Shown: positions 1,615-11,291 of the stretch, piece by piece
Layout of the letters: each line of letters opens with the position of its first letter
Position numbering within the stretch: the stretch's first letter is position 1
NCBI GenBank assembly: GCA_047495785.1
Contig: JBLDXI010000002.1
Coordinates: 2,480,001 to 2,544,000 of the forward strand
Origin: Lepidodermella squamata
Taxonomy: Eukaryota > Animalia > Gastrotricha
DNA length: 64,000 nt
Direction: 5' to 3'
Notes under the pieces: generated by a model
Database searches by the model: none
Seen by the model: only the letters and a program-made list of their open reading frames with translations
Told to the model about the DNA's origin: nothing
Translations under genes and position numbers: made by a program

Positions 1615-2631
1615 ATGAAATTTCGGCTGATTTTCGTAGGCTTGATATTGAAAATTGTGAAGACCTCTTCATCAGATGTATCTTCGGCGCTTTTTTGTGA
1701 ACCTATCCAACAACTTCAGCCGGCAGTATGCGCCAATGCTATCGACTACAACGTCACTATTCGACCGAATCTATTCGGCCATATCAACCAAGAAGAAAGT
1801 CACAAAGCCGTAAAAAATCATGCGATTTTCTTTATTATTGATAAAAATAGATTTTTTTCGTAGTTACTCGAATATGGGAAGTTGTTCGGAAATGCCGAAA
1901 CCAGTTGTTCGGAACTTTTCGAACTCTTCGTCTGCGCCCTGTATCTACCGCAATGTGTGATTGTCGACGAGCCGGCCGATCAGCCGGCAATTGCTATGAA
2001 CACCTGTTATCACACGTTATGCATGGATGCGCGCGAGCAATGTCAACCATGGCTTTCAATTTACGGCATCTCATGGCCTTTCAATCTCGATTGCGACAAG
2101 TTGCTACCGTCCGACCCAGCCGACTGTTTTTACCCGATTTCAAAGTCCAACAGAGAGACTGAGGCGAAACTGGCTCATATTTTACAAGAACCGACGCCTA
2201 TGGTCACTTCAACCCACGCGAGTACTCACTCGACTCGTTCAGATTTTAACGTCTCCAAGGTAGAATCCGATTGGGTTAGAATAAATGCTGGCGGTAGAAT
2301 CTATCTATCGACGAGGGAAACAATGTGCCGAGGCGAAAGTCAAAATTCGCTAATTTTAAGAAAGCTCTTCGACTGCGAGACGATGGGCTCTCGAGCTGCT
2401 GAAAATCATCGTGACGAAGATGGTGCGTATTTAATCGATCGGGATTCGAATTATTTCAGGGTTATTCTGAACTTTTTGCGCACGGGCAAGGTCACCATCG
2501 ACGAGGGCATGGCAGATGAAGGTGTCTTGGAAGAGGCGAACTTTTTCAACTTGTCTTCTATGGTTAGGCTTGTCAAACGTCGGATTCGGCGCAAGCAGCA
2601 GTTGGCCGAACTAACTAGCAATTGCGACTGA
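1615..2631 (+). CDS. Signal peptide + Frizzled cysteine-rich domain + KCTD-type BTB/T1 domain protein (2 exons: 1615-1809, 1864-2631)
   Basis: MKFRLIFVGLIL N-terminus; CRD motifs CEPI..C...YNVT..PNLFGH.NQEE and LFVCALYLPQC..LC..AREQC..L..YGISWP..LDC; BTB motifs WVRINAGG and GAYLIDRDSNYFRVILNFLRTG..GVLEEANFFNL. GT-AG intron 1810-1863 keeps frame. Confidence 0.85.
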
Positions 2632-3170
2632 AAATTCGAACGATATTCAAAAAAAGTCCTCCTTAATAGAAAATTACTTGATCTCTCACAAACTAATTTC
2701 CTAATAAATATTGCGACCATGATGAACCCAAGCCAAATTTTTTTCTGCCTTTATATGCTGCCTCGGCCGGAGCTAGGATTCGGGTTTATTAGGCTTATTA
2801 ATCCTTAGCTTTTCTGTGGGAAAGGGTGCACGAGCGGGGTCAAGGGGCGATGCGGAGACATGAGGAACGTCGATGTGACTCGTCACTATATTTACCGACC
2901 ACTTGTCGCCGAAAGTAACTCTGCAAACAAAGCAGCTCATGCGCGCGTATCGTTGATGCGAAGTGCCAGCCGCAAAAAATGACAATTTATATTACAGCAT
3001 CACGAGCGATTTTTTTCGCGTTGATTGCGCGCATGAAAAAAACATATTTGCAATTAAGGCGGTGATGAATCAATTAACAACTGAATGTGATTATTCTCGG
3101 CCGTTTTTTTTTTAAGGTGGAGGATTCCTTATATCGCCGACGTCATACTTTTTCTTTTCATCCGTGAAAC

Positions 3171-3762
3171 ATGAAAGCGATCCACGTTCTGAGTCTAGTC
3201 GTTTTAGGTGGGTGCTGCCTCCTGATGGGCGCCGCGGAGGCTATTTCGTGCTTCAACGCGACTCACGCTGTCCCGGCTCATATCAGCGATTGGCTGCCCC
3301 GAGACGCCTACGTGATTGACGGCTGCGAATGCTGCTCGGTAATTTTATTAAAGCACCAAATTAGAAATTGAATTCGGGCTAAACAAATACCGAAATTGAT
3401 TGTCTAATTCTAAATTTAGTTTGATTGACAGTTTATTTAATATAATTTGACATTATGTCGATTTTAGTCTTCAAATATTTCATATTTTTCTTCAGCGCGA
3501 GGCGCACGTACACGACGGTGTGGTCATTTTCCGTTGGGGCTGCGCTGCTAAGCAAGCGTCAGGATGCGCCGACTCGGTCGCGTTCGCCCAAGATACGGCT
3601 GCCCATGGCGCCGCTGAGTCCTGCAAATGCTGCAGCCCATTGTGCAACAAACAGCGCCGATGCGTCGACCCAACCGCCTCGCCCCTACTTCAAATCTCGC
3701 CCCTGGCCCATCAGCAGCCACAGTTCCCCGTTGAAGCCGATCAATTTCATCAATTTTATTAA
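3171..3762 (+). CDS. Small secreted Ly6/uPAR (three-finger)-like Cys-rich protein (2 exons: 3171-3338, 3496-3762)
   Basis: Signal peptide ending AEA|ISCF, RWGC, terminal CCSPLCN motif typical of LU domains; phase-0 GT-AG intron 3339-3495. Confidence 0.7.
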
Positions 3763-3915
3763 AATAATTAATTTTAATTAATAGCTGTAGTTGAACCTAC
3801 GACACCGATGCTAAGTTAAAACTGCCATTTTTTCCGGTTTTACTGAAAACATAAATTACAATAAAATTGTTAACCGTCGTTTCCAATCACTAATTCAGCT
3901 CTGAGGCAGTTTAGT

Positions 3916-6504
3916 TCAGCGAGGGCCGTAATCATCAGGACGGTGGGAACTTATCGGGCTAGACATGAATTCTTGCGGAATCTGCGAAAAGGTAACAGGG
4001 CTAGTCTGAGGCGATGTCGGGCTACCAACACGGATGCGAGCCATTTGCGTTGTAACCTCAGCCAGAAGAGGCTCCATACTTTCCGCACCGGGGTAAACCA
4101 TTCGGCACAGGTCCATCAGGCGTAGCATTTTCGTCGTATACAAACCGAATATAGCGACTTGGTCTAGAATGGTCTCGACCCGTTTTCGAGCGGCTAGTGG
4201 CGTCGATTGATGCGCCAACATTTCGACGGCCCGCAGGTAATCTTCGGCGATTAATTTTACCTTGGCGGATTCGACAAGGCCAGGTAAATCCGGGTTGAAA
4301 AACAGCAAACCGGCGATGAGGCCGAATTCCGCGACATTGACGCCCGCATTTTTCAAACTTCGCCCGGAATCTCGAGAGCCTGCGTCTGCTCTCTGGAGGC
4401 AAAAATAACATAAAAAATCAAGAAATTGAAAAATCGACTCACAGCAACAAGAATACTTCGAGATCTCGCCAGAGCCATACTCTGGGCATCGAGGTTGAAT
4501 ACGAGCGCTGTATCTGTGACAGGGTCGTAGTCGATGGATAATTGGAGTACTAGGATTGGGAATAGGGCGTTGCTGAAGAGCAGAATTCGATCGTTGACAT
4601 TGGTGAGCCAGTCGAAACCAGGCAAGTTTCGCGTGAATTGGAGCCCATATTTGAAGCACATGACAAAATTTCCCATCACTTCGCGCCAAATTTCCATTGG
4701 ACCCATTGTTTCTGTTGCATGGCATCGTTCCTTTTAAAAAATAACAAAACTAATAAGAAAACCTCAAAAATAAAAAATAGAAAATAAATAGAAATAACAA
4801 AAATATTAAAAACTGTTATAATCAAAATTTAAAAAAATTCAGAAAAATTAAATAAAAGTATAAAATAAATATGTTTACTTCGCTCATTTTAGCGAGAATT
4901 TTGGTAGCCTGAACAACTTTTCCAATGAGCCACTCGGTCCTTGCGCCTTGATCAAGGGACAATTGCCGGCAATAGGGAAGCGGCGATGGGGGGTTAGCCA
5001 GGAACCTTTCGTAAATCCTCAACGGATCCATCTCAGTCGGAAGCCATTTGTATCCATTGCGCTCTAATTGCTGTAGATCGATGACGCCCGACCCAGAGTT
5101 GTACAGCCACAGGAGATTTGCTGTTGGGAGTGAAGCGTTGCTGTCGGATCTCTTCTCCCTGCGAATCGTATCTATCAGCTCGCTGTACTTGTTGAAAATG
5201 GACGGCGCAACCACAGCGACGGCTTTACCTCCCGAAGAAGATTGAGTTGAAGAGCTGTTAGTGCTGTTTGTCTCGAAAGAAGCGTCGTTAGCAACGCGCA
5301 TCGCGCCGGTTGAAAACGACGGTCCGGTAGCTTCGAAAGACGCTGGAAATTCGCTCCTGGTTTGCTCGAAAGACGGCGTTTGAACTATCGAACTAGGAGT
5401 TTGGACGGGCGCTACGATTTGCTGTATTTCTTGCTGTTGTGAAGGCGCGATTGTTTTACCGCTGTAATACTCTTTCACGGCTTCTCGTATGGCTCTTTTC
5501 TGTGCTTGAGATCGGCGACCTGCGACTGATCCGAAGGGAGACATTCCAACGGCCATGCATTTCGCGATCCGACAAGCAGCGCATCGCATTCGGCTTTGCG
5601 AAACACGGCTGATTTGCGAAAGGGATGACCCGTTATCGAAACATTTCCCTCCAGTCAGGCAACACGAGGTCCCGGGGAAGATACCAGCTCGCCCCTGGGT
5701 ACTACCTCGAGCCCAAGCTCCAGAGTTATTGTTGTTAGGACCTCCGAGGCGACGGGCGAAACGACCGTAAAAAGCCTTGCAAGCATCGCACGTAACAGCT
5801 CCGAAATGAACCTGAAATTCGAAGTTAATTAAGGTGGATTTAGAATTGAGAAATTAATAATTTATACCCCGGTGGCTGCCCATCCACAAACAGAGCATGG
5901 CAATTTGGAAACATCTAGGTTGTCCATTTCACTAGAATCCAAGCCGTCGCTGTTTCTTGATTTTGGATCCAAGGGAAATTTCGTCTCGTCCATATTCGCC
6001 TCGTCATCGCTCTCGCTTTTTCGGCTAAATACGGCGTCAACATTTCTCGTTACACTACTGCTAGCGGTTACTCCGAAAACCAGCGGCTTTTCAGCCTCAG
6101 CGAATCCGGCTTGAAGACACCGCCGGTACCGGCATGATTTGCAAATCGAATGCGACCGGGCAGCAGCAGCAGCAGTTGGCGACTCATCCTCAGCAGTTGT
6201 TACCTCAGGCTTCACTGCATTGGAAGGCGACGCCTTGAACTTACACATACATGGCGCTAATTCCAGCCGTTCATTCGATTTCATAGAGTGTCGATAGAAA
6301 AATTTCTGGAAATAAAATCAAGCATAAAATCGAATTATAATTCCGTTTATAAGAAGGTCATACTCGACACGCTTGGCACAGCTTTTGCCGGCTCGTTGAT
6401 GCATTGAGCGTGATAGGAAATTCACAGGCGTAGCAAGTTTGCTGAAACATATCAAGAGTCGCGTAATCTTCGTTTTTAACTGGCAGACAGTCTAAGCTAA
6501 GCAT
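3916..6504 (-). CDS. Nuclear receptor with two tandem C4 DNA-binding domains (2DBD-NR-like); exons 6504-6364, 6305-5868, 5811-4879, 4730-4443, 4392-3916
   Basis: DBD1 CYAC-x15-CQACRKFFYRHS...CKSCRYRRCLQAG; DBD2 CSVC-x13-CDACKAFYGR...RCAACRIAKCMAVGM; LBD signature FTRNLPGF..L...DRILL and EFGLIAGLLFFNPDLPGL. All four introns GT-AG and frame-consistent. Confidence 0.85.
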
Positions 6505-7893: not shown

Positions 7894-10800
7894 ATGAAGG
7901 TAGCGTTCTTTTTATTGGTAACTTTGAATATTCTCATCGCGATATCATCGGTAAAATCAGGTATTGAGAAATTGAATTTCGAACAAAAAACAACCGATGC
8001 TTTTTCTTCAGCCTGTGTTGTCCCGAACAAAACTCTGCCGTTATCAGCGTATACATTCCGCCCTTCTACCCTTCAAGTAAAGCCTAAAATTTCACCCAAT
8101 ATACAAAAAGTTGAATTTTTACAGATTTTCACCGGATTGCGGTTGACTTGCAGCGGATTTCTGACAGGTTGGCGGGTGATTTTGACCACGCCAAAGCAAA
8201 TCAGCAAGATAAGCGGCGTTTACCTGGCCGTGTTTCGCCAATTAACCGCGTCGAAATTTCAGCTAATGGGCATCACCGAGGTGAATCACGCTACGCCGAG
8301 CAATAACAACAGCAGTAGGAAAGACGATAGCCGCGTTAGTTGGGAGGTGATACCCGCTCGGCCGCAATTTCCAGTCCAACGAGGCGATGTTCTAGGGATT
8401 TTCTATAAACGATGGTTCATCAGCGAGCGCGAGGTGTCGATTCCTGTTGCAAGCGAGGAGAATGTCGACCCGTCAACTCTGCCGACTTTTGTCGCGATGA
8501 AAGACTGGTACGACGTATCTGACGCGTTGCAAACAGGTGGAGTCCTATCTATGAGTGACAGTGGTATTGTTAGACGTCTACCAGCTCTTCAAGCCTATGT
8601 TAACGTCGGAAGTAAGAAATTTAAGCTGAAATTCAATGATATTTTTAATAAATTTTTATTACAGTTTGTGGAAATGCAAGGTTCGATTTTACAATAATTT
8701 AAAGGATTTTCGCGACCATTTATTTTAGGGTGGAAGATGCTGAGGAATGTGATGATTCAAACACATCTGACAACGATGGTTGTAGCTCGTAAGTTGGCAC
8801 AATTTCTCATGGAAAATATTTAAATTTTTTTTATATTTTGCCGAAGTCTTTGCCGGGAAGAGCCCAACTCAGGTTCTACTTCAGCAATATCCCCGGATGC
8901 TTGGAACGTCGTCAACGTCTGCGGAAATGGGGTAGCCGAACCTCCGGCTGAAGAGTGCGATGATGGGAATCGCGTAAATGGTATATAAAAAATTACCTAA
9001 ATTCCCTGAAAATTAATTCTTAATCGAACTAAGGCGACGGTTGTTCCTCGCGATGCAAACTTGAAGACCCTGAAGGACCGACATGTGGCAATAACAAGCA
9101 AGAACCTGGCGAGCAATGTGATGACGGTAATAATCGTGATGGCGACGGTTGTTCGACGGATTGTCGAAAGGAGCAATTAGCTGTCTGTGGAAACCAGGTA
9201 AAATTCCTCTTTCCGCCGTTTTAAATTAAAAAATCTTCATTCTTTTACCCCAGATTTTGGAAATCGGAGAACAGTGCGACGACGGGAATCTAATAAATCG
9301 TAAATTTGCGTAAAACTATTGCGAATTTCGGAAATTTGAATTTTTTCAGAGGATGGCTGCTCGTCGAAATGTTTGCTCGAAGGTCTCGGAGCTTGTGGAG
9401 ACTTGATACTGGATATTTCTGAAGAATGCGATGATGGAAACGTTCTTGGAGGTAAAAATGACCTCCCTTTACCTCACATCGATAATTAATTTCGTTATCC
9501 CTTTAATTTATAGGCGATGGCTGTTCTAGTAATTGCACAAAAGAAATTTGCGGCAACGGTGTTTTGGACGCTAATGAAGAATGCGATTATTTGTTGGCGA
9601 AGGAAACGCTGAATTCCCTAACATGCAGCCTCAGTTGCAAGTTTGAACGGTGTGGTAATGGGATATTGGACCCTTACGAGCAGTGCGACGATGGTAATAA
9701 CGTTGCGGGGGACAACTGCTCGCCAAATTGCACCCTGGAAATCTGCGGAAACGGTGTTCGAGAAGGTTCCGAAGAGGTTGGCTCGGCTATTGATTAAATT
9801 TCCTTAATTTATGACAATGTTTTATTACAGTGCGATGACGGAAATGCTGAGGCGAATGACGGCTGCTCAAATGTGTGTACGGTGGTCGAAGTTGTTCAGC
9901 CCACGTCAGCTAAGCAAAGTTGGATACCCTCGGCAGCTCCGGAATCTATCGCAGCCGTTGCTATAGGTGTCCCAGAATTTATGACATTTGAAGCGGAAAC
10001 TACCTCGACATCGTCTTCGAGCACGACTTCGACATCTACAACAACAGTAACGACTACAACCTCGGAAAGGGTAACGCCTTATATCCCACCCCCAGCTGCC
10101 CCAATGGTTGATTTTTCCAACTTCCCTGAGGGTGAAACTTTCGAGTTGGGAGGGGTAGCGCTGTCAGCCGCTCCTATGGAAACTTCGACTGAACCCGCCC
10201 CGACCTATGTTGCTCCTGTTTACCGAGCTCGGTCATCTTCTCGATTACACAGCCTTGAAGGCCAGTTAAGAATAATTCCGCCTAAACCTTCATCGCGACT
10301 TCGAAATGACGCGTTTAAACTGCCTGATTTCTTCATTAGTCGGAAAACAACGGCGAAACGGCAGCAACAAAATTTTTACTACAAACCGCAGGATCAGCTT
10401 GTTTATCATGAGCAGCTGCTTTTGACTACGACTCCGGCGTTGGAGACCGCAACTGAACTATCGACCACAGCTGTTAACAAAGCTGAAACATCCCTGACGA
10501 CCACTCGTGAAATCAAAGTTGATTTGAACAGCCCAAAAGTTTCGCCGAGTAAGACCAATTTAAATAATTTCAAACTCTCCCTCAGACAAATTTTGAACTG
10601 TTTAAACTGTTTAAACTATTTTTCTATTAATCTACTAATTTTCGAAGGCCACTAAATTTCGGTTCGATCATTGAAAATTCGGTGAATTTGCAGAAAATAC
10701 CAAAGATTAACGAACAGACCCGAAATTCCGTGAATACAAAACCGATACGAAATTCCCTGTTCCCTGAACATTTCGGGGTAATCATTAATTTTCGAAAAAA

Positions 10801-11291
10801 TTTGACCTTAAAAATTTGAAACGTTGGTGTAACGTACCGCTTCGCGTTCAAATCTGGTTTTTCGAAAACAATTTACAATTTACATAAAAATTAGCTTTAT
10901 GTAATGTTAGGTTTTGGCACGGGTTTCGCCATCCCTGTTGTCTGTGTACTTATTATGCCTATGACTAATGCATGCACCACAGATAGTGGAAGCCCCTCGG
11001 GGTCAAACATGATAGTTAGCGGCTAGACTGAAGAAGATCAAATGACAATTAATCTTATCAAAATCAATTTCAGAATGCCTTGAAGCTCCATCGTTAAGTG
11101 GGACTTGTCGCGATCAGCCTGAAATTCGCTGGTTTTACAACGCCATCTCTCACCACTGTGACTGGTTCTACGACAAATCGTGCTACGCCGGCGCGAATTA
11201 CTTCAGCTCAAAAAATGACTGCATGTCTGCGTGTGGTTTGCTTGTCTCCGAAAAAGACTTACTCTTCGACATTCCAAATCCAGTAGCTTAG
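7894..11291 (+). CDS. Secreted multidomain protein: signal peptide, unidentified N-domain, 8 Myxococcus-type Cys-rich (DUF4215-like) repeats, Thr/Ser-rich stalk, C-terminal Kunitz domain
   Basis: [19 protein letters not shown]; repeats CGNG..(D/E)..E(E/Q)CDDGN...DGCS..C over 8665-9890; last exon 11074-11291 (phase-1 join to donor after 10548) encodes [53 protein letters not shown]. Confidence 0.8.

What the first reader, a model, noticed from the sequence alone, without database searches (positions are those of the whole stretch)
1615..2631. Frizzled CRD fused to a KCTD-type BTB domain with no transmembrane segment
Seen: signal peptide, CRD, Thr/Ser linker and BTB, with the CRD C-half and the BTB in one uninterrupted exon and no hydrophobic helix between them. 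Known: CRDs are extracellular Wnt-binding modules; KCTD BTBs are cytosolic oligomerisation/Cullin3-binding modules. Inference: a secreted multivalent Wnt trap using BTB as an oligomerisation scaffold. I do not know this architecture from elsewhere.
Basis: partly seen in the sequence, partly recalled or inferred. Interest (0 to 1): 0.75.

Follow-up and report, generated by a model that had tools for sequence, protein, structure and literature searches.

The report
Secreted Frizzled CRD fused to BTB
A tiny freshwater animal (probably the gastrotrich Lepidodermella squamata) has a real, conserved gene that joins a secreted Wnt-binding-type domain to a ring-forming domain otherwise known only inside cells, a combination found just once more among 1.8 billion reference proteins; what it does is untested.

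Summary
A two-exon gene (1615-1809, 1864-2631; 54-nt phase-0 intron) encodes an N-terminal signal-like segment, a full ten-cysteine Frizzled-type CRD, a disordered Ser/Thr linker and a KCTD5/KCTD17-type BTB_2 domain. There is no membrane-spanning segment and no KCTD5 C-terminal domain. The second half of the CRD, the linker and the BTB lie in one open exon.

It is not an assembly or annotation artefact. An independent metagenome contig (L006) carries an ortholog with the same layout, the same intron position and phase, all twelve domain cysteines and linked neighbour genes. Its linker differs in sequence and length but stays in frame.

An exhaustive search of 1.84 billion representative proteins, two word searches, one metagenome scan and a structure-atlas search found no other Fz+BTB_2 protein. 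Full-text paper searches found none either.

Entry into the secretory pathway is well supported. Pentamer formation, Wnt binding and antagonism are inferences. SignalP-type prediction, oligomer modelling and any search with the joined spliced protein were not done.

The parts
1615..1809 (+). Exon 1: start codon, signal-like segment, CRD cysteines 1-2, YNVT sequon (1750-1758)
1615..1674 (+). Putative cleavable signal peptide (about residues 1-20: MKFR, hydrophobic core LIFVGLILKIV, TSSS)
   Evidence: Hydropathy KD11 = 2.9. The ortholog also has an N-terminal hydrophobic core despite unrelated sequence. Heuristic only; no SignalP.
1810..1863 (+). Intron, 54 nt, GT..AG, phase 0, 20% G+C
   Evidence: Same position and phase in L006. 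The junction is colinear with the intron-less Frizzled CRD.
1864..2631 (+). Exon 2: CRD C-half, linker, BTB, basic tail, stop
1696..2127 (+). Frizzled-type CRD, Cys1 to Cys10 (interrupted by the intron)
   Evidence: Pfam Fz. PDB Fz4/sFRP3 E about 1e-7. Ten Cys conserved in L006.
2128..2268 (+). Ser/Thr-rich disordered linker (47 codons) with NVS sequon at 2248-2256
   Evidence: pLDDT under 50 for exon-2 residues 106-133. 26% identity and 37 gap columns against the ortholog. 0 stops in frame, 1-2 in the other frames.
2272..2562 (+). KCTD5/2/17-type BTB_2 (T1) domain
   Evidence: Pfam 6.8e-14. KCTD17/KCTD5 E 6e-28 to 1e-26. Foldseek 3drz TM 0.80. Tree.
2575..2595 (+). Polybasic cluster KRRIRRK on the helix that follows the BTB
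   Evidence: The ortholog has RRRMRKRK. KCTD5 and the genome's own KCTD5 ortholog have mixed charges here.
2703..2708 (+). AATAAA, candidate polyadenylation signal 72 nt after the stop

Best explanation
This is a lineage-restricted secreted Frizzled-related protein. The C-terminal module of classical sFRPs (NTR) is replaced by the BTB domain of a KCTD5/2/17-type protein.

Shown: the gene structure, both domains, the absence of a TM segment and of the KCTD5 C-terminal domain, conservation of the whole layout in a second organism, and rarity.

Inferred:
1. The N-terminal hydrophobic segment is a cleaved signal peptide, so the CRD and the BTB both enter the ER lumen and are exported.
2. The BTB keeps the homo-pentamer habit of KCTD5/KCTD17 and so displays about five CRDs on flexible 45-residue tethers.
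3. The CRD binds a lipidated ligand, most likely Wnt, with high avidity, because one Wnt acyl chain can bridge two CRDs.
4. The ring of polybasic C-terminal helices tethers the complex to heparan sulfate or matrix.

The net effect would be an extracellular, matrix-bound multivalent binder that sequesters Wnt or shapes its range.
For: Architecture:
- Pfam Fz and BTB_2 are both above cut-off in one exon.
- The full CRD scores 58.5 bits.
- The ten Cys show Frizzled-type spacing X8, X6 and X6 (C7-C8), plus the NXT sequon after Cys2 that Frizzleds and sFRP3/4 carry (PMC6938638, PMC4669655).

Secretory routing:
- N-terminal hydrophobic cores are present in both orthologs and no other hydrophobic segment is found.
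- All ten CRD cysteines are conserved at 58% CRD identity, which points to disulfides and so to an oxidising compartment.
- The N-terminal layout matches that of the genome's own Frizzled receptor.

Real and selected:
- The ortholog on ENA contig L006 has the same intron position and phase and the same domain order. Its linker has diverged in sequence and length but is still open (0 in-frame stops against 3-4 out of frame).
- L006's neighbour genes map to the same G000 contig C2.

Oligomer:
- The BTB is 46-50% identical to the KCTD5/KCTD17 BTBs, whose crystal entries hold five chains.
- It falls inside the KCTD5/2/17 clade, support 96/95.

Ligand:
- FZD4 groove residues L132, F135 and F137 (PMC5458758) align to L, Y and I here.

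Tail:
- KRRIRRK here and RRRMRKRK in the ortholog, against mixed charge in KCTD5.

Context:
- The genome has at least 4 Wnt loci and one 7TM Frizzled, and no NTR domain was detected.
Against:
- No trained signal-peptide predictor was run, and the hydrophobic core here is short, with a Lys inside it.
- No BTB domain is known to work outside the cytosol, as far as I know and by paper searches. Folding and pentamer formation in the ER are therefore assumptions.
- The BTB gained no new cysteines in either ortholog, and the CUL3-critical F128 and helix alpha1 are retained (PMC11047111). This is what a still-cytosolic adaptor would show.
- In the ortholog the groove positions equivalent to F135 and F137 are not hydrophobic as aligned, and a 12-residue insert sits there.
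- C6-C7 spacing is X4 rather than the canonical X3 in both orthologs.
Confidence: 0.45

Rival explanations
1. The gene is real and enters the secretory pathway, but it is not a Wnt trap. The CRD binds another ligand (free fatty acid, sterol, a Norrin-like protein or a matrix component), or the protein works inside the ER or Golgi. The BTB would serve as a generic oligomerisation or protein-docking module.
For: CRDs outside the Frizzled/sFRP group bind other ligands (established knowledge). The groove residues are only partly kept in the ortholog, and both orthologs share an unusual C6-X4-C7 spacing. The CRD is only about 40% identical to the genome's own Frizzled CRD.
Against: The CRD's best matches are Frizzled-4, sFRP3 and Frizzled-7, not Smoothened, NPC1 or RTK-type CRDs. 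C7-C8 spacing is X6, the Frizzled type (PMC6938638). There is no KDEL-like retention signal at either C-terminus.
Confidence: 0.3
2. The protein, or an isoform started from an internal ATG before the BTB, works in the cytosol as a CUL3 adaptor-like BTB protein. The N-terminal segment is then not an efficient signal peptide, and the CRD serves as a substrate- or lipid-binding module.
For: The F128 equivalent and helix alpha1 of the CUL3 interface are retained (PMC11047111). In-frame Met codons precede the BTB in both orthologs. The polybasic tail could equally be a nuclear localisation signal.
Against: Ten conserved cysteines and a conserved N-glycosylation sequon make little sense in a reducing cytosol. 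Both orthologs keep an N-terminal hydrophobic core. The variable loop, a major part of the CUL3 primary interface, carries inserts of different length in the two orthologs: 15 gap columns between them, about 6 extra residues here against KCTD5, and a longer acidic insert in the ortholog. The substrate-binding C-terminal domain of KCTD5 is absent. The internal Met positions are not conserved.
Confidence: 0.12
3. Artefact: two separate genes, a decaying chimeric pseudogene, or a chimera produced by multiple displacement amplification in the assembly.
For: The published L. squamata assembly was made from MDA-amplified DNA, which can form chimeras (PMC11660948). No RNA evidence was obtained here.
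Against: An independent metagenome assembly carries the same fusion with the same intron, both domains intact and an open but diverged linker. Both domains are 40-50% diverged from their paralogs with no stops.
Confidence: 0.03

Closest known systems
Secreted Frizzled-related proteins (sFRP1/2/5 and sFRP3/4 = FrzB)
   Same: Signal peptide plus one Frizzled-type ten-cysteine CRD and no membrane anchor. The NXT sequon after Cys2 is as in sFRP3/4. PDB sFRP3 is among the best CRD matches. The basic C-terminal part could bind heparin, as the sFRP NTR does (the latter from general knowledge).
   Different: There is no NTR domain here, and none was detected in the genome. The C-terminal module is a BTB_2 domain. 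The expected valency is about five rather than one.
Lineage-specific CRD-only secreted proteins (Platynereis FzCRD-1 to -3; PMC4669655)
   Same: Spiralian, lineage-restricted duplicates of a Frizzled CRD with a signal peptide and no 7TM or NTR, interpreted as secreted Wnt binders.
   Different: Those proteins end after the CRD and a variable tail. This one carries a folded BTB oligomerisation domain.
KCTD5 / KCTD2 / KCTD17 (pentameric CUL3 adaptors for G-beta-gamma)
   Same: The BTB is 46-50% identical, has the same fold (TM 0.80 to 3drz) and lies in the same clade. F128 and the helix alpha1 motif are retained.
   Different: The C-terminal domain that binds G-beta-gamma is missing. The N-terminus carries a signal-like segment and a disulfide-rich extracellular-type domain. 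The branch is 4-5 times longer than for ordinary KCTD5s. The variable loop is expanded and the tail is polybasic. The genome's true KCTD5 ortholog is elsewhere (L002, 70% identical to an annelid KCTD5).
Frizzled receptors
   Same: The CRD is most similar to the genome's single detected Frizzled (40% identity, E 3e-9) and to Fz4 and Fz7 in the PDB.
   Different: There is no 7TM domain. The CRD has an intron that the receptor's CRD lacks.

Membership tests
Frizzled-type CRD (Pfam Fz, PF01392) | Profile match above the curated cut-off (32.1 bits) | tested here: met
   42.2 bits for exon 2 alone. 58.5 bits over profile positions 1-107 when read across the intron.
Frizzled-type CRD (Pfam Fz, PF01392) | Ten conserved cysteines with spacing C3-X8-C4-X6-C5 ... 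C6-X3-C7-X6/7-C8 (Pei and Grishin pattern as quoted in PMC6938638) | tested here: inconclusive
   All ten Cys are present and conserved in the ortholog. X8, X6 and X6 are met, but C6-C7 is X4 rather than X3 in both orthologs.
sFRP | C-terminal netrin-like (NTR) domain after the CRD | tested here: not met
   No NTR hit in the protein or in the genome (which is weak evidence for absence).
Frizzled receptor (class F GPCR) | Seven-transmembrane Frizzled domain (PF01534) | tested here: not met
   No hit in the gene. No hydrophobic segment after the N-terminus. The only PF01534 locus is on contig C32.
KCTD family (BTB_2 / T1 domain, PF02214) | BTB_2 profile match above the cut-off (21.4 bits) and T1/BTB fold | tested here: met
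   52.4 bits. KCTD17/KCTD5 E 6e-28 to 1e-26. AF2 model pLDDT about 90 in the BTB, Foldseek 3drz TM 0.80.
KCTD5/2/17 subfamily | C-terminal pentameric domain (human KCTD5 156-209) that binds G-beta-gamma | tested here: not met
   tblastn with two full-length KCTD5s finds only the BTB in the window and in L006, but finds both parts in the true ortholog L002.
KCTD5/2/17 subfamily | Homo-pentameric BTB ring | not testable with these tools
   Only single-chain prediction is available. Inferred from 46-50% identity to pentameric BTBs.
CUL3 substrate adaptor | CUL3-contact elements: alpha1 R59-R64, alpha2/v-loop/beta3 F69-R94, F128 (PMC11047111) | tested here: inconclusive
   F128 is kept as F in both orthologs. 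Alpha1 RQTLCR reads RETMCR here and RTTLCD in the ortholog. The v-loop carries inserts of different length in the two orthologs and is only 29% identical between them. Binding itself is not testable.
Secreted protein | Cleavable N-terminal signal peptide, no other membrane anchor | tested here: inconclusive
   Positive n-region, hydrophobic core and small residues before the likely cut are present in both orthologs. There is no TM, CaaX or GPI-like tail. No trained predictor was available.

The most novel reading that the evidence does not exclude
This would be the first natural example of a BTB/T1 domain working outside the cell. A KCTD5-derived pentamer ring would have been moved into the secretory pathway to turn a Frizzled CRD into a five-armed, heparan-sulfate-tethered Wnt binder. 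That would be a natural counterpart of engineered multimeric decoy receptors, and a new class of extracellular Wnt modulator that stands in for sFRPs in gastrotrichs.
Probability: 0.35. Interest if true: 0.8.

Novelty: new variant of a known kind. Interest (0 to 1): 0.62.

Why it matters
BTB/T1 domains are treated as strictly cytosolic or nuclear modules, and Frizzled CRDs as strictly extracellular ones. A conserved single-chain fusion of the two with no membrane span forces one of them into the 'wrong' compartment. If the BTB works in the secretory pathway, it shows that evolution can move a cytosolic oligomerisation scaffold outside the cell to multiply the avidity of a ligand-binding domain. 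It would also add a new kind of extracellular Wnt regulator in a phylum whose Wnt toolkit looks small (at least 4 Wnt loci, one 7TM Frizzled, no NTR detected). It offers a compact natural design for pentavalent decoy receptors too. The case is limited to one obscure lineage and rests on sequence inference only.

Tried and rejected
- The first word search found only BTB relatives. The CRD-only word search found nothing.
- The ESM Atlas feature search gave no usable hit. The Atlas shape search gave only KCTD clusters.
- The JGI metagenome scan failed once. On the second try it matched 599 patterns but no relative.
- Microsynteny through L006's fucosyltransferase failed, because it belongs to a family with 78 matches in the genome.
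- Hidden TM segment: none found in either ortholog.
- Downstream KCTD5 C-terminal exons: none.
- Prenylation, GPI or KDEL signals: none seen by eye.
- The prokaryotic promoter/terminator scan is irrelevant for this eukaryotic gene.
- dN/dS was not attempted. At 45% protein identity, synonymous sites are expected to be saturated.
- The BTB tree does not resolve where within the KCTD5/2/17 clade the two long branches attach.
All searches used exon 1 and exon 2 by reference.

Full report
**What is there**

The window is animal DNA with short AT-rich introns. At 1615 an ATG opens a 65-codon exon. It encodes MKFR, an 11-residue hydrophobic core and TSSS. The start of a Frizzled-type cysteine-rich domain follows: Cys1, Cys2 and the YNVT sequon.

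A 54-nt GT..AG intron follows at 1810-1863. It is phase 0 and has 20% G+C, against 47% in the exons. Exon 2 (1864-2631) is one open frame of 255 codons.

Pfam finds two domains in exon 2, both above the curated cut-offs:
- Fz at 1.3e-10, covering profile positions 43-107 of 110.
- BTB_2 at 6.8e-14, covering profile positions 1-89 of 94.

Exon 1 supplies Fz positions 1-32. A six-frame read across the intron scores 58.5 bits over Fz positions 1-107. The splice junction gives a gapless match to the intron-less CRD of the genome's own Frizzled receptor.

Every search used the exons by reference.

**Domain identities**

*CRD.* The CRD half in exon 2 matches solved Frizzled-4, sFRP3 and Frizzled-7 CRDs at E 1e-7 to 1e-6. 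The cysteine spacing is as follows (PMC6938638):
- X8 between C3 and C4.
- X6 between C4 and C5.
- X6 between C7 and C8, the Frizzled type rather than the receptor-tyrosine-kinase type.
- X4 between C6 and C7 instead of the canonical X3, in both orthologs.

The NXT sequon after Cys2 is a feature of Frizzled receptors and sFRP3/4 (PMC4669655).

*BTB.* It matches the BTB domains of KCTD17 and KCTD5 at E 6e-28 to 1e-26, with 46-50% identity.

*AlphaFold2 model of exon 2.* I built it with an alignment of the ortholog, KCTD5-like BTBs and CRDs. It gave the following:
- Mean pLDDT 75.
- About 90 in most of the BTB.
- 70-90 in most of the CRD half.
- Below 50 for the linker, residues 106-133.
- Foldseek's best hits are the KCTD5 BTB (3drz, TM 0.80 by target) and KCTD17.

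*BTB tree.* In a maximum-likelihood tree the BTB falls inside the KCTD5/2/17 clade, with support 96/95 against KCTD9-like outgroups. Its branch is long, 1.8 against a median of 0.43.

*Missing KCTD5 C-terminal domain.* tblastn with two full-length KCTD5 proteins finds only the BTB in the window. In the genome's true KCTD5 ortholog (L002, 70% identical to an annelid KCTD5) it finds both the BTB and the C-terminal domain. The G-beta-gamma-binding domain of KCTD5 (PMC11047111) is therefore absent here.

**No membrane span; signal-like N-terminus**

After the N-terminus, the most hydrophobic 19-residue window has KD 1.6 and is the conserved CRD helix. Nothing in the linker or the BTB comes close. 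The C-terminus has no CaaX, GPI-like or KDEL-like signal (by eye).

The N-terminus has a positive n-region, a hydrophobic core (KD 2.9 over 11 residues) and small residues before the likely cut. This is the same layout as the N-terminus of the genome's Frizzled receptor. No trained signal-peptide predictor was available, so this step is heuristic.

**Is the fusion real?**

The genome (121.2 Mb, 151 contigs) fits the published MDA-based assembly of Lepidodermella squamata (122 Mb, 157 contigs; PMC11660948). Earlier notes of this scan made the same attribution. MDA can create chimeras, so I looked for independent evidence.

An exhaustive phmmer search of 1.84 billion representative proteins returned 2604 hits. 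Among the best 150, exactly one has both a CRD and a BTB. It is P0013, called on a 19.5-kb contig of an ENA metagenome assembly (L006).

Reading that contig shows a complete ortholog:
- Exon 1 (9220-9897) has its own N-terminal hydrophobic core, about 160 low-complexity residues and CRD Cys1-2 with YNVT.
- An 85-nt phase-0 intron sits at exactly the same codon position as in the window.
- Exon 2 (9983-10912) carries the rest of the CRD, an acidic linker and a BTB_2 domain, and ends in RRRMRKRK plus a few residues.
- All ten CRD cysteines and both BTB cysteines are conserved.

Identity between the two exon-2 products differs by region:

| Region | Identity | Gap columns |
|---|---|---|
| CRD part | 58% | 20 |
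| Linker | 26% | 37 |
| BTB | 44% | 15 |

Both linkers have no in-frame stop, although the other frames have 1-2 stops in the window and 3-4 in L006.

L006's other genes find their best matches on the same G000 contig C2, at 2.05, 2.34 and 2.34 Mb. The CRD-BTB gene is at 2.48 Mb. This shows conserved linkage in a fairly distant relative.

Together these results rule out an assembly chimera, two separate genes and a decaying pseudogene.

**Rarity**

No further Fz+BTB_2 protein turned up:
- Apart from P0013, none appeared among the best 150 hits of the exhaustive search.
- The profile word search scored 7111 candidates and only P0013 carried both Pfam families.
- The JGI metagenome scan found none.
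- The ESM Atlas shape search found none.
- Full-text paper searches for the combination, or for secreted BTB domains, found nothing relevant.

One caveat applies. A fusion of a very divergent BTB_2 with a CRD could score below the 150-row cut.

**Origin**

In the same genome the closest CRD belongs to the only detected 7TM Frizzled (C32, 40% identity). The closest BTB belongs to the KCTD5 ortholog (C32, 48% identity). The two genes lie head to head, 11 kb apart, with two unrelated genes between them.

For one fixed pair in 121 Mb this proximity is unlikely by chance, roughly 2e-4. It hints that the fusion arose from a local duplication and rearrangement, but I did not test this further.

**How it most likely works (inference)**

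If the N-terminus is a signal peptide, the whole chain enters the ER. The CRD needs this for its five disulfides.

KCTD5 and KCTD17 BTBs crystallise as pentamers: their PDB entries hold five chains (PMC11047111, PMC5664961). A BTB that keeps this habit would display about five CRDs on flexible tethers.

One unsaturated Wnt acyl chain can bridge two CRDs (PMC5458758). A pre-clustered CRD should therefore bind Wnt with high avidity.

Of the FZD4 groove residues named in that paper, L132, F135 and F137 align to L, Y and I in this protein. By comparison with the genome's own Frizzled, the T81/F82/L85 side reads E/Y/L. That mapping rests partly on my memory of the FZD4 sequence and is only a lead.

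In the ortholog the F135 and F137 positions are not hydrophobic as aligned, and a 12-residue insert sits there. Wnt-lipid binding as the conserved function is therefore uncertain.

The helix after the BTB carries KRRIRRK here and RRRMRKRK in the ortholog. KCTD5 and the local KCTD5 ortholog have mixed charges at this place. Five such helices on one face of a ring would make a heparan-sulfate-binding patch, or, in a cytosolic reading, a nuclear localisation signal.

The genome has at least four Wnt loci and no detectable NTR domain. This protein may therefore fill the sFRP niche. Other CRD genes in the genome include a ROR-like kinase, a CRD with a single TM segment, and one CRD fragment of unknown context.

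**What speaks against the secreted-scaffold reading**

The CUL3-critical F128 and helix alpha1 of KCTD5 are retained. The BTB has gained no new cysteines. A still-cytosolic adaptor would show the same features.

On the other side, the variable loop, a main part of the CUL3 primary interface (F69-R94 in KCTD5; PMC11047111), is not well kept. It has about 6 extra residues here against KCTD5 and a longer acidic insert in the ortholog. It is only 29% identical between the two, with 15 gap columns.

Sequence alone cannot settle this.

**Verdict**

This is a real, conserved and very rare domain fusion. I file it as a new variant of the secreted Frizzled-related kind. It is not an sFRP (no NTR), not a Frizzled receptor (no 7TM) and not a canonical KCTD5 (no C-terminal domain).

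The multivalent Wnt-trap mechanism is the best available hypothesis, at about 0.45 as a whole. Entry into the secretory pathway is about 0.85. Oligomerisation and Wnt binding are less sure.

Noticed in passing
G000:C32:1825646-1839331 (L003, L002, L011): The closest paralogs of the two halves of the fusion gene lie head to head 11 kb apart, with MRPL53-like and DLST-like ORFs between them. They are the genome's only detected 7TM Frizzled and its KCTD5 ortholog. This is a possible trace of how the fusion arose.
   Followed up: partly
G000 genome-wide: The Wnt toolkit looks small: four Wnt loci (C24, C54, C42, C14), one Frizzled 7TM locus and no NTR domain detected. These are lower bounds, since published BUSCO completeness is about 81%.
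   Followed up: partly
L014 (G000:C54:3306500-3313500), L015 (C20:249000-256000), L016 (C3:4063000-4070000): These are the other CRD loci. L016 is a ROR-like receptor kinase (Ig, CRD, kringle-like, TM, kinase, by eye). L014 is a CRD followed by one TM helix and a long low-complexity tail with no Pfam hit. L015 is a CRD of unknown context.
   Followed up: partly
window 3171-3765 (+): This looks like a two-exon gene for a small cysteine-rich protein with a clear N-terminal hydrophobic signal. The pieces have no Pfam hit.
   Followed up: partly
window 3916-5589 (-): The ORFs end a zinc-finger-like motif (CRIAKCMAVGMS) that recalls nuclear hormone receptors, with a possible ligand-binding part downstream. 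The pieces tried have no Pfam hit.
   Followed up: partly
L012 6041-6400 (-) = G000:C2:2476041-2476400: A bHLH gene (Pfam HLH 6e-7), hairy/E(spl)-like by eye, lies about 3.6 kb before the window start.
   Followed up: no
L006 1-11195 versus G000:C2 2.05-2.48 Mb: Genes packed into 11 kb on the metagenome contig map to one G000 contig spread over about 435 kb. Linkage is conserved, with very different spacing or many intervening genes.
   Followed up: partly
P0007-P0011 (representative library): These are very large multi-CRD proteins, for example 13 Fz domains in 1834 residues. Their origin is unknown, and they outrank all single-CRD proteins in the search.
   Followed up: no
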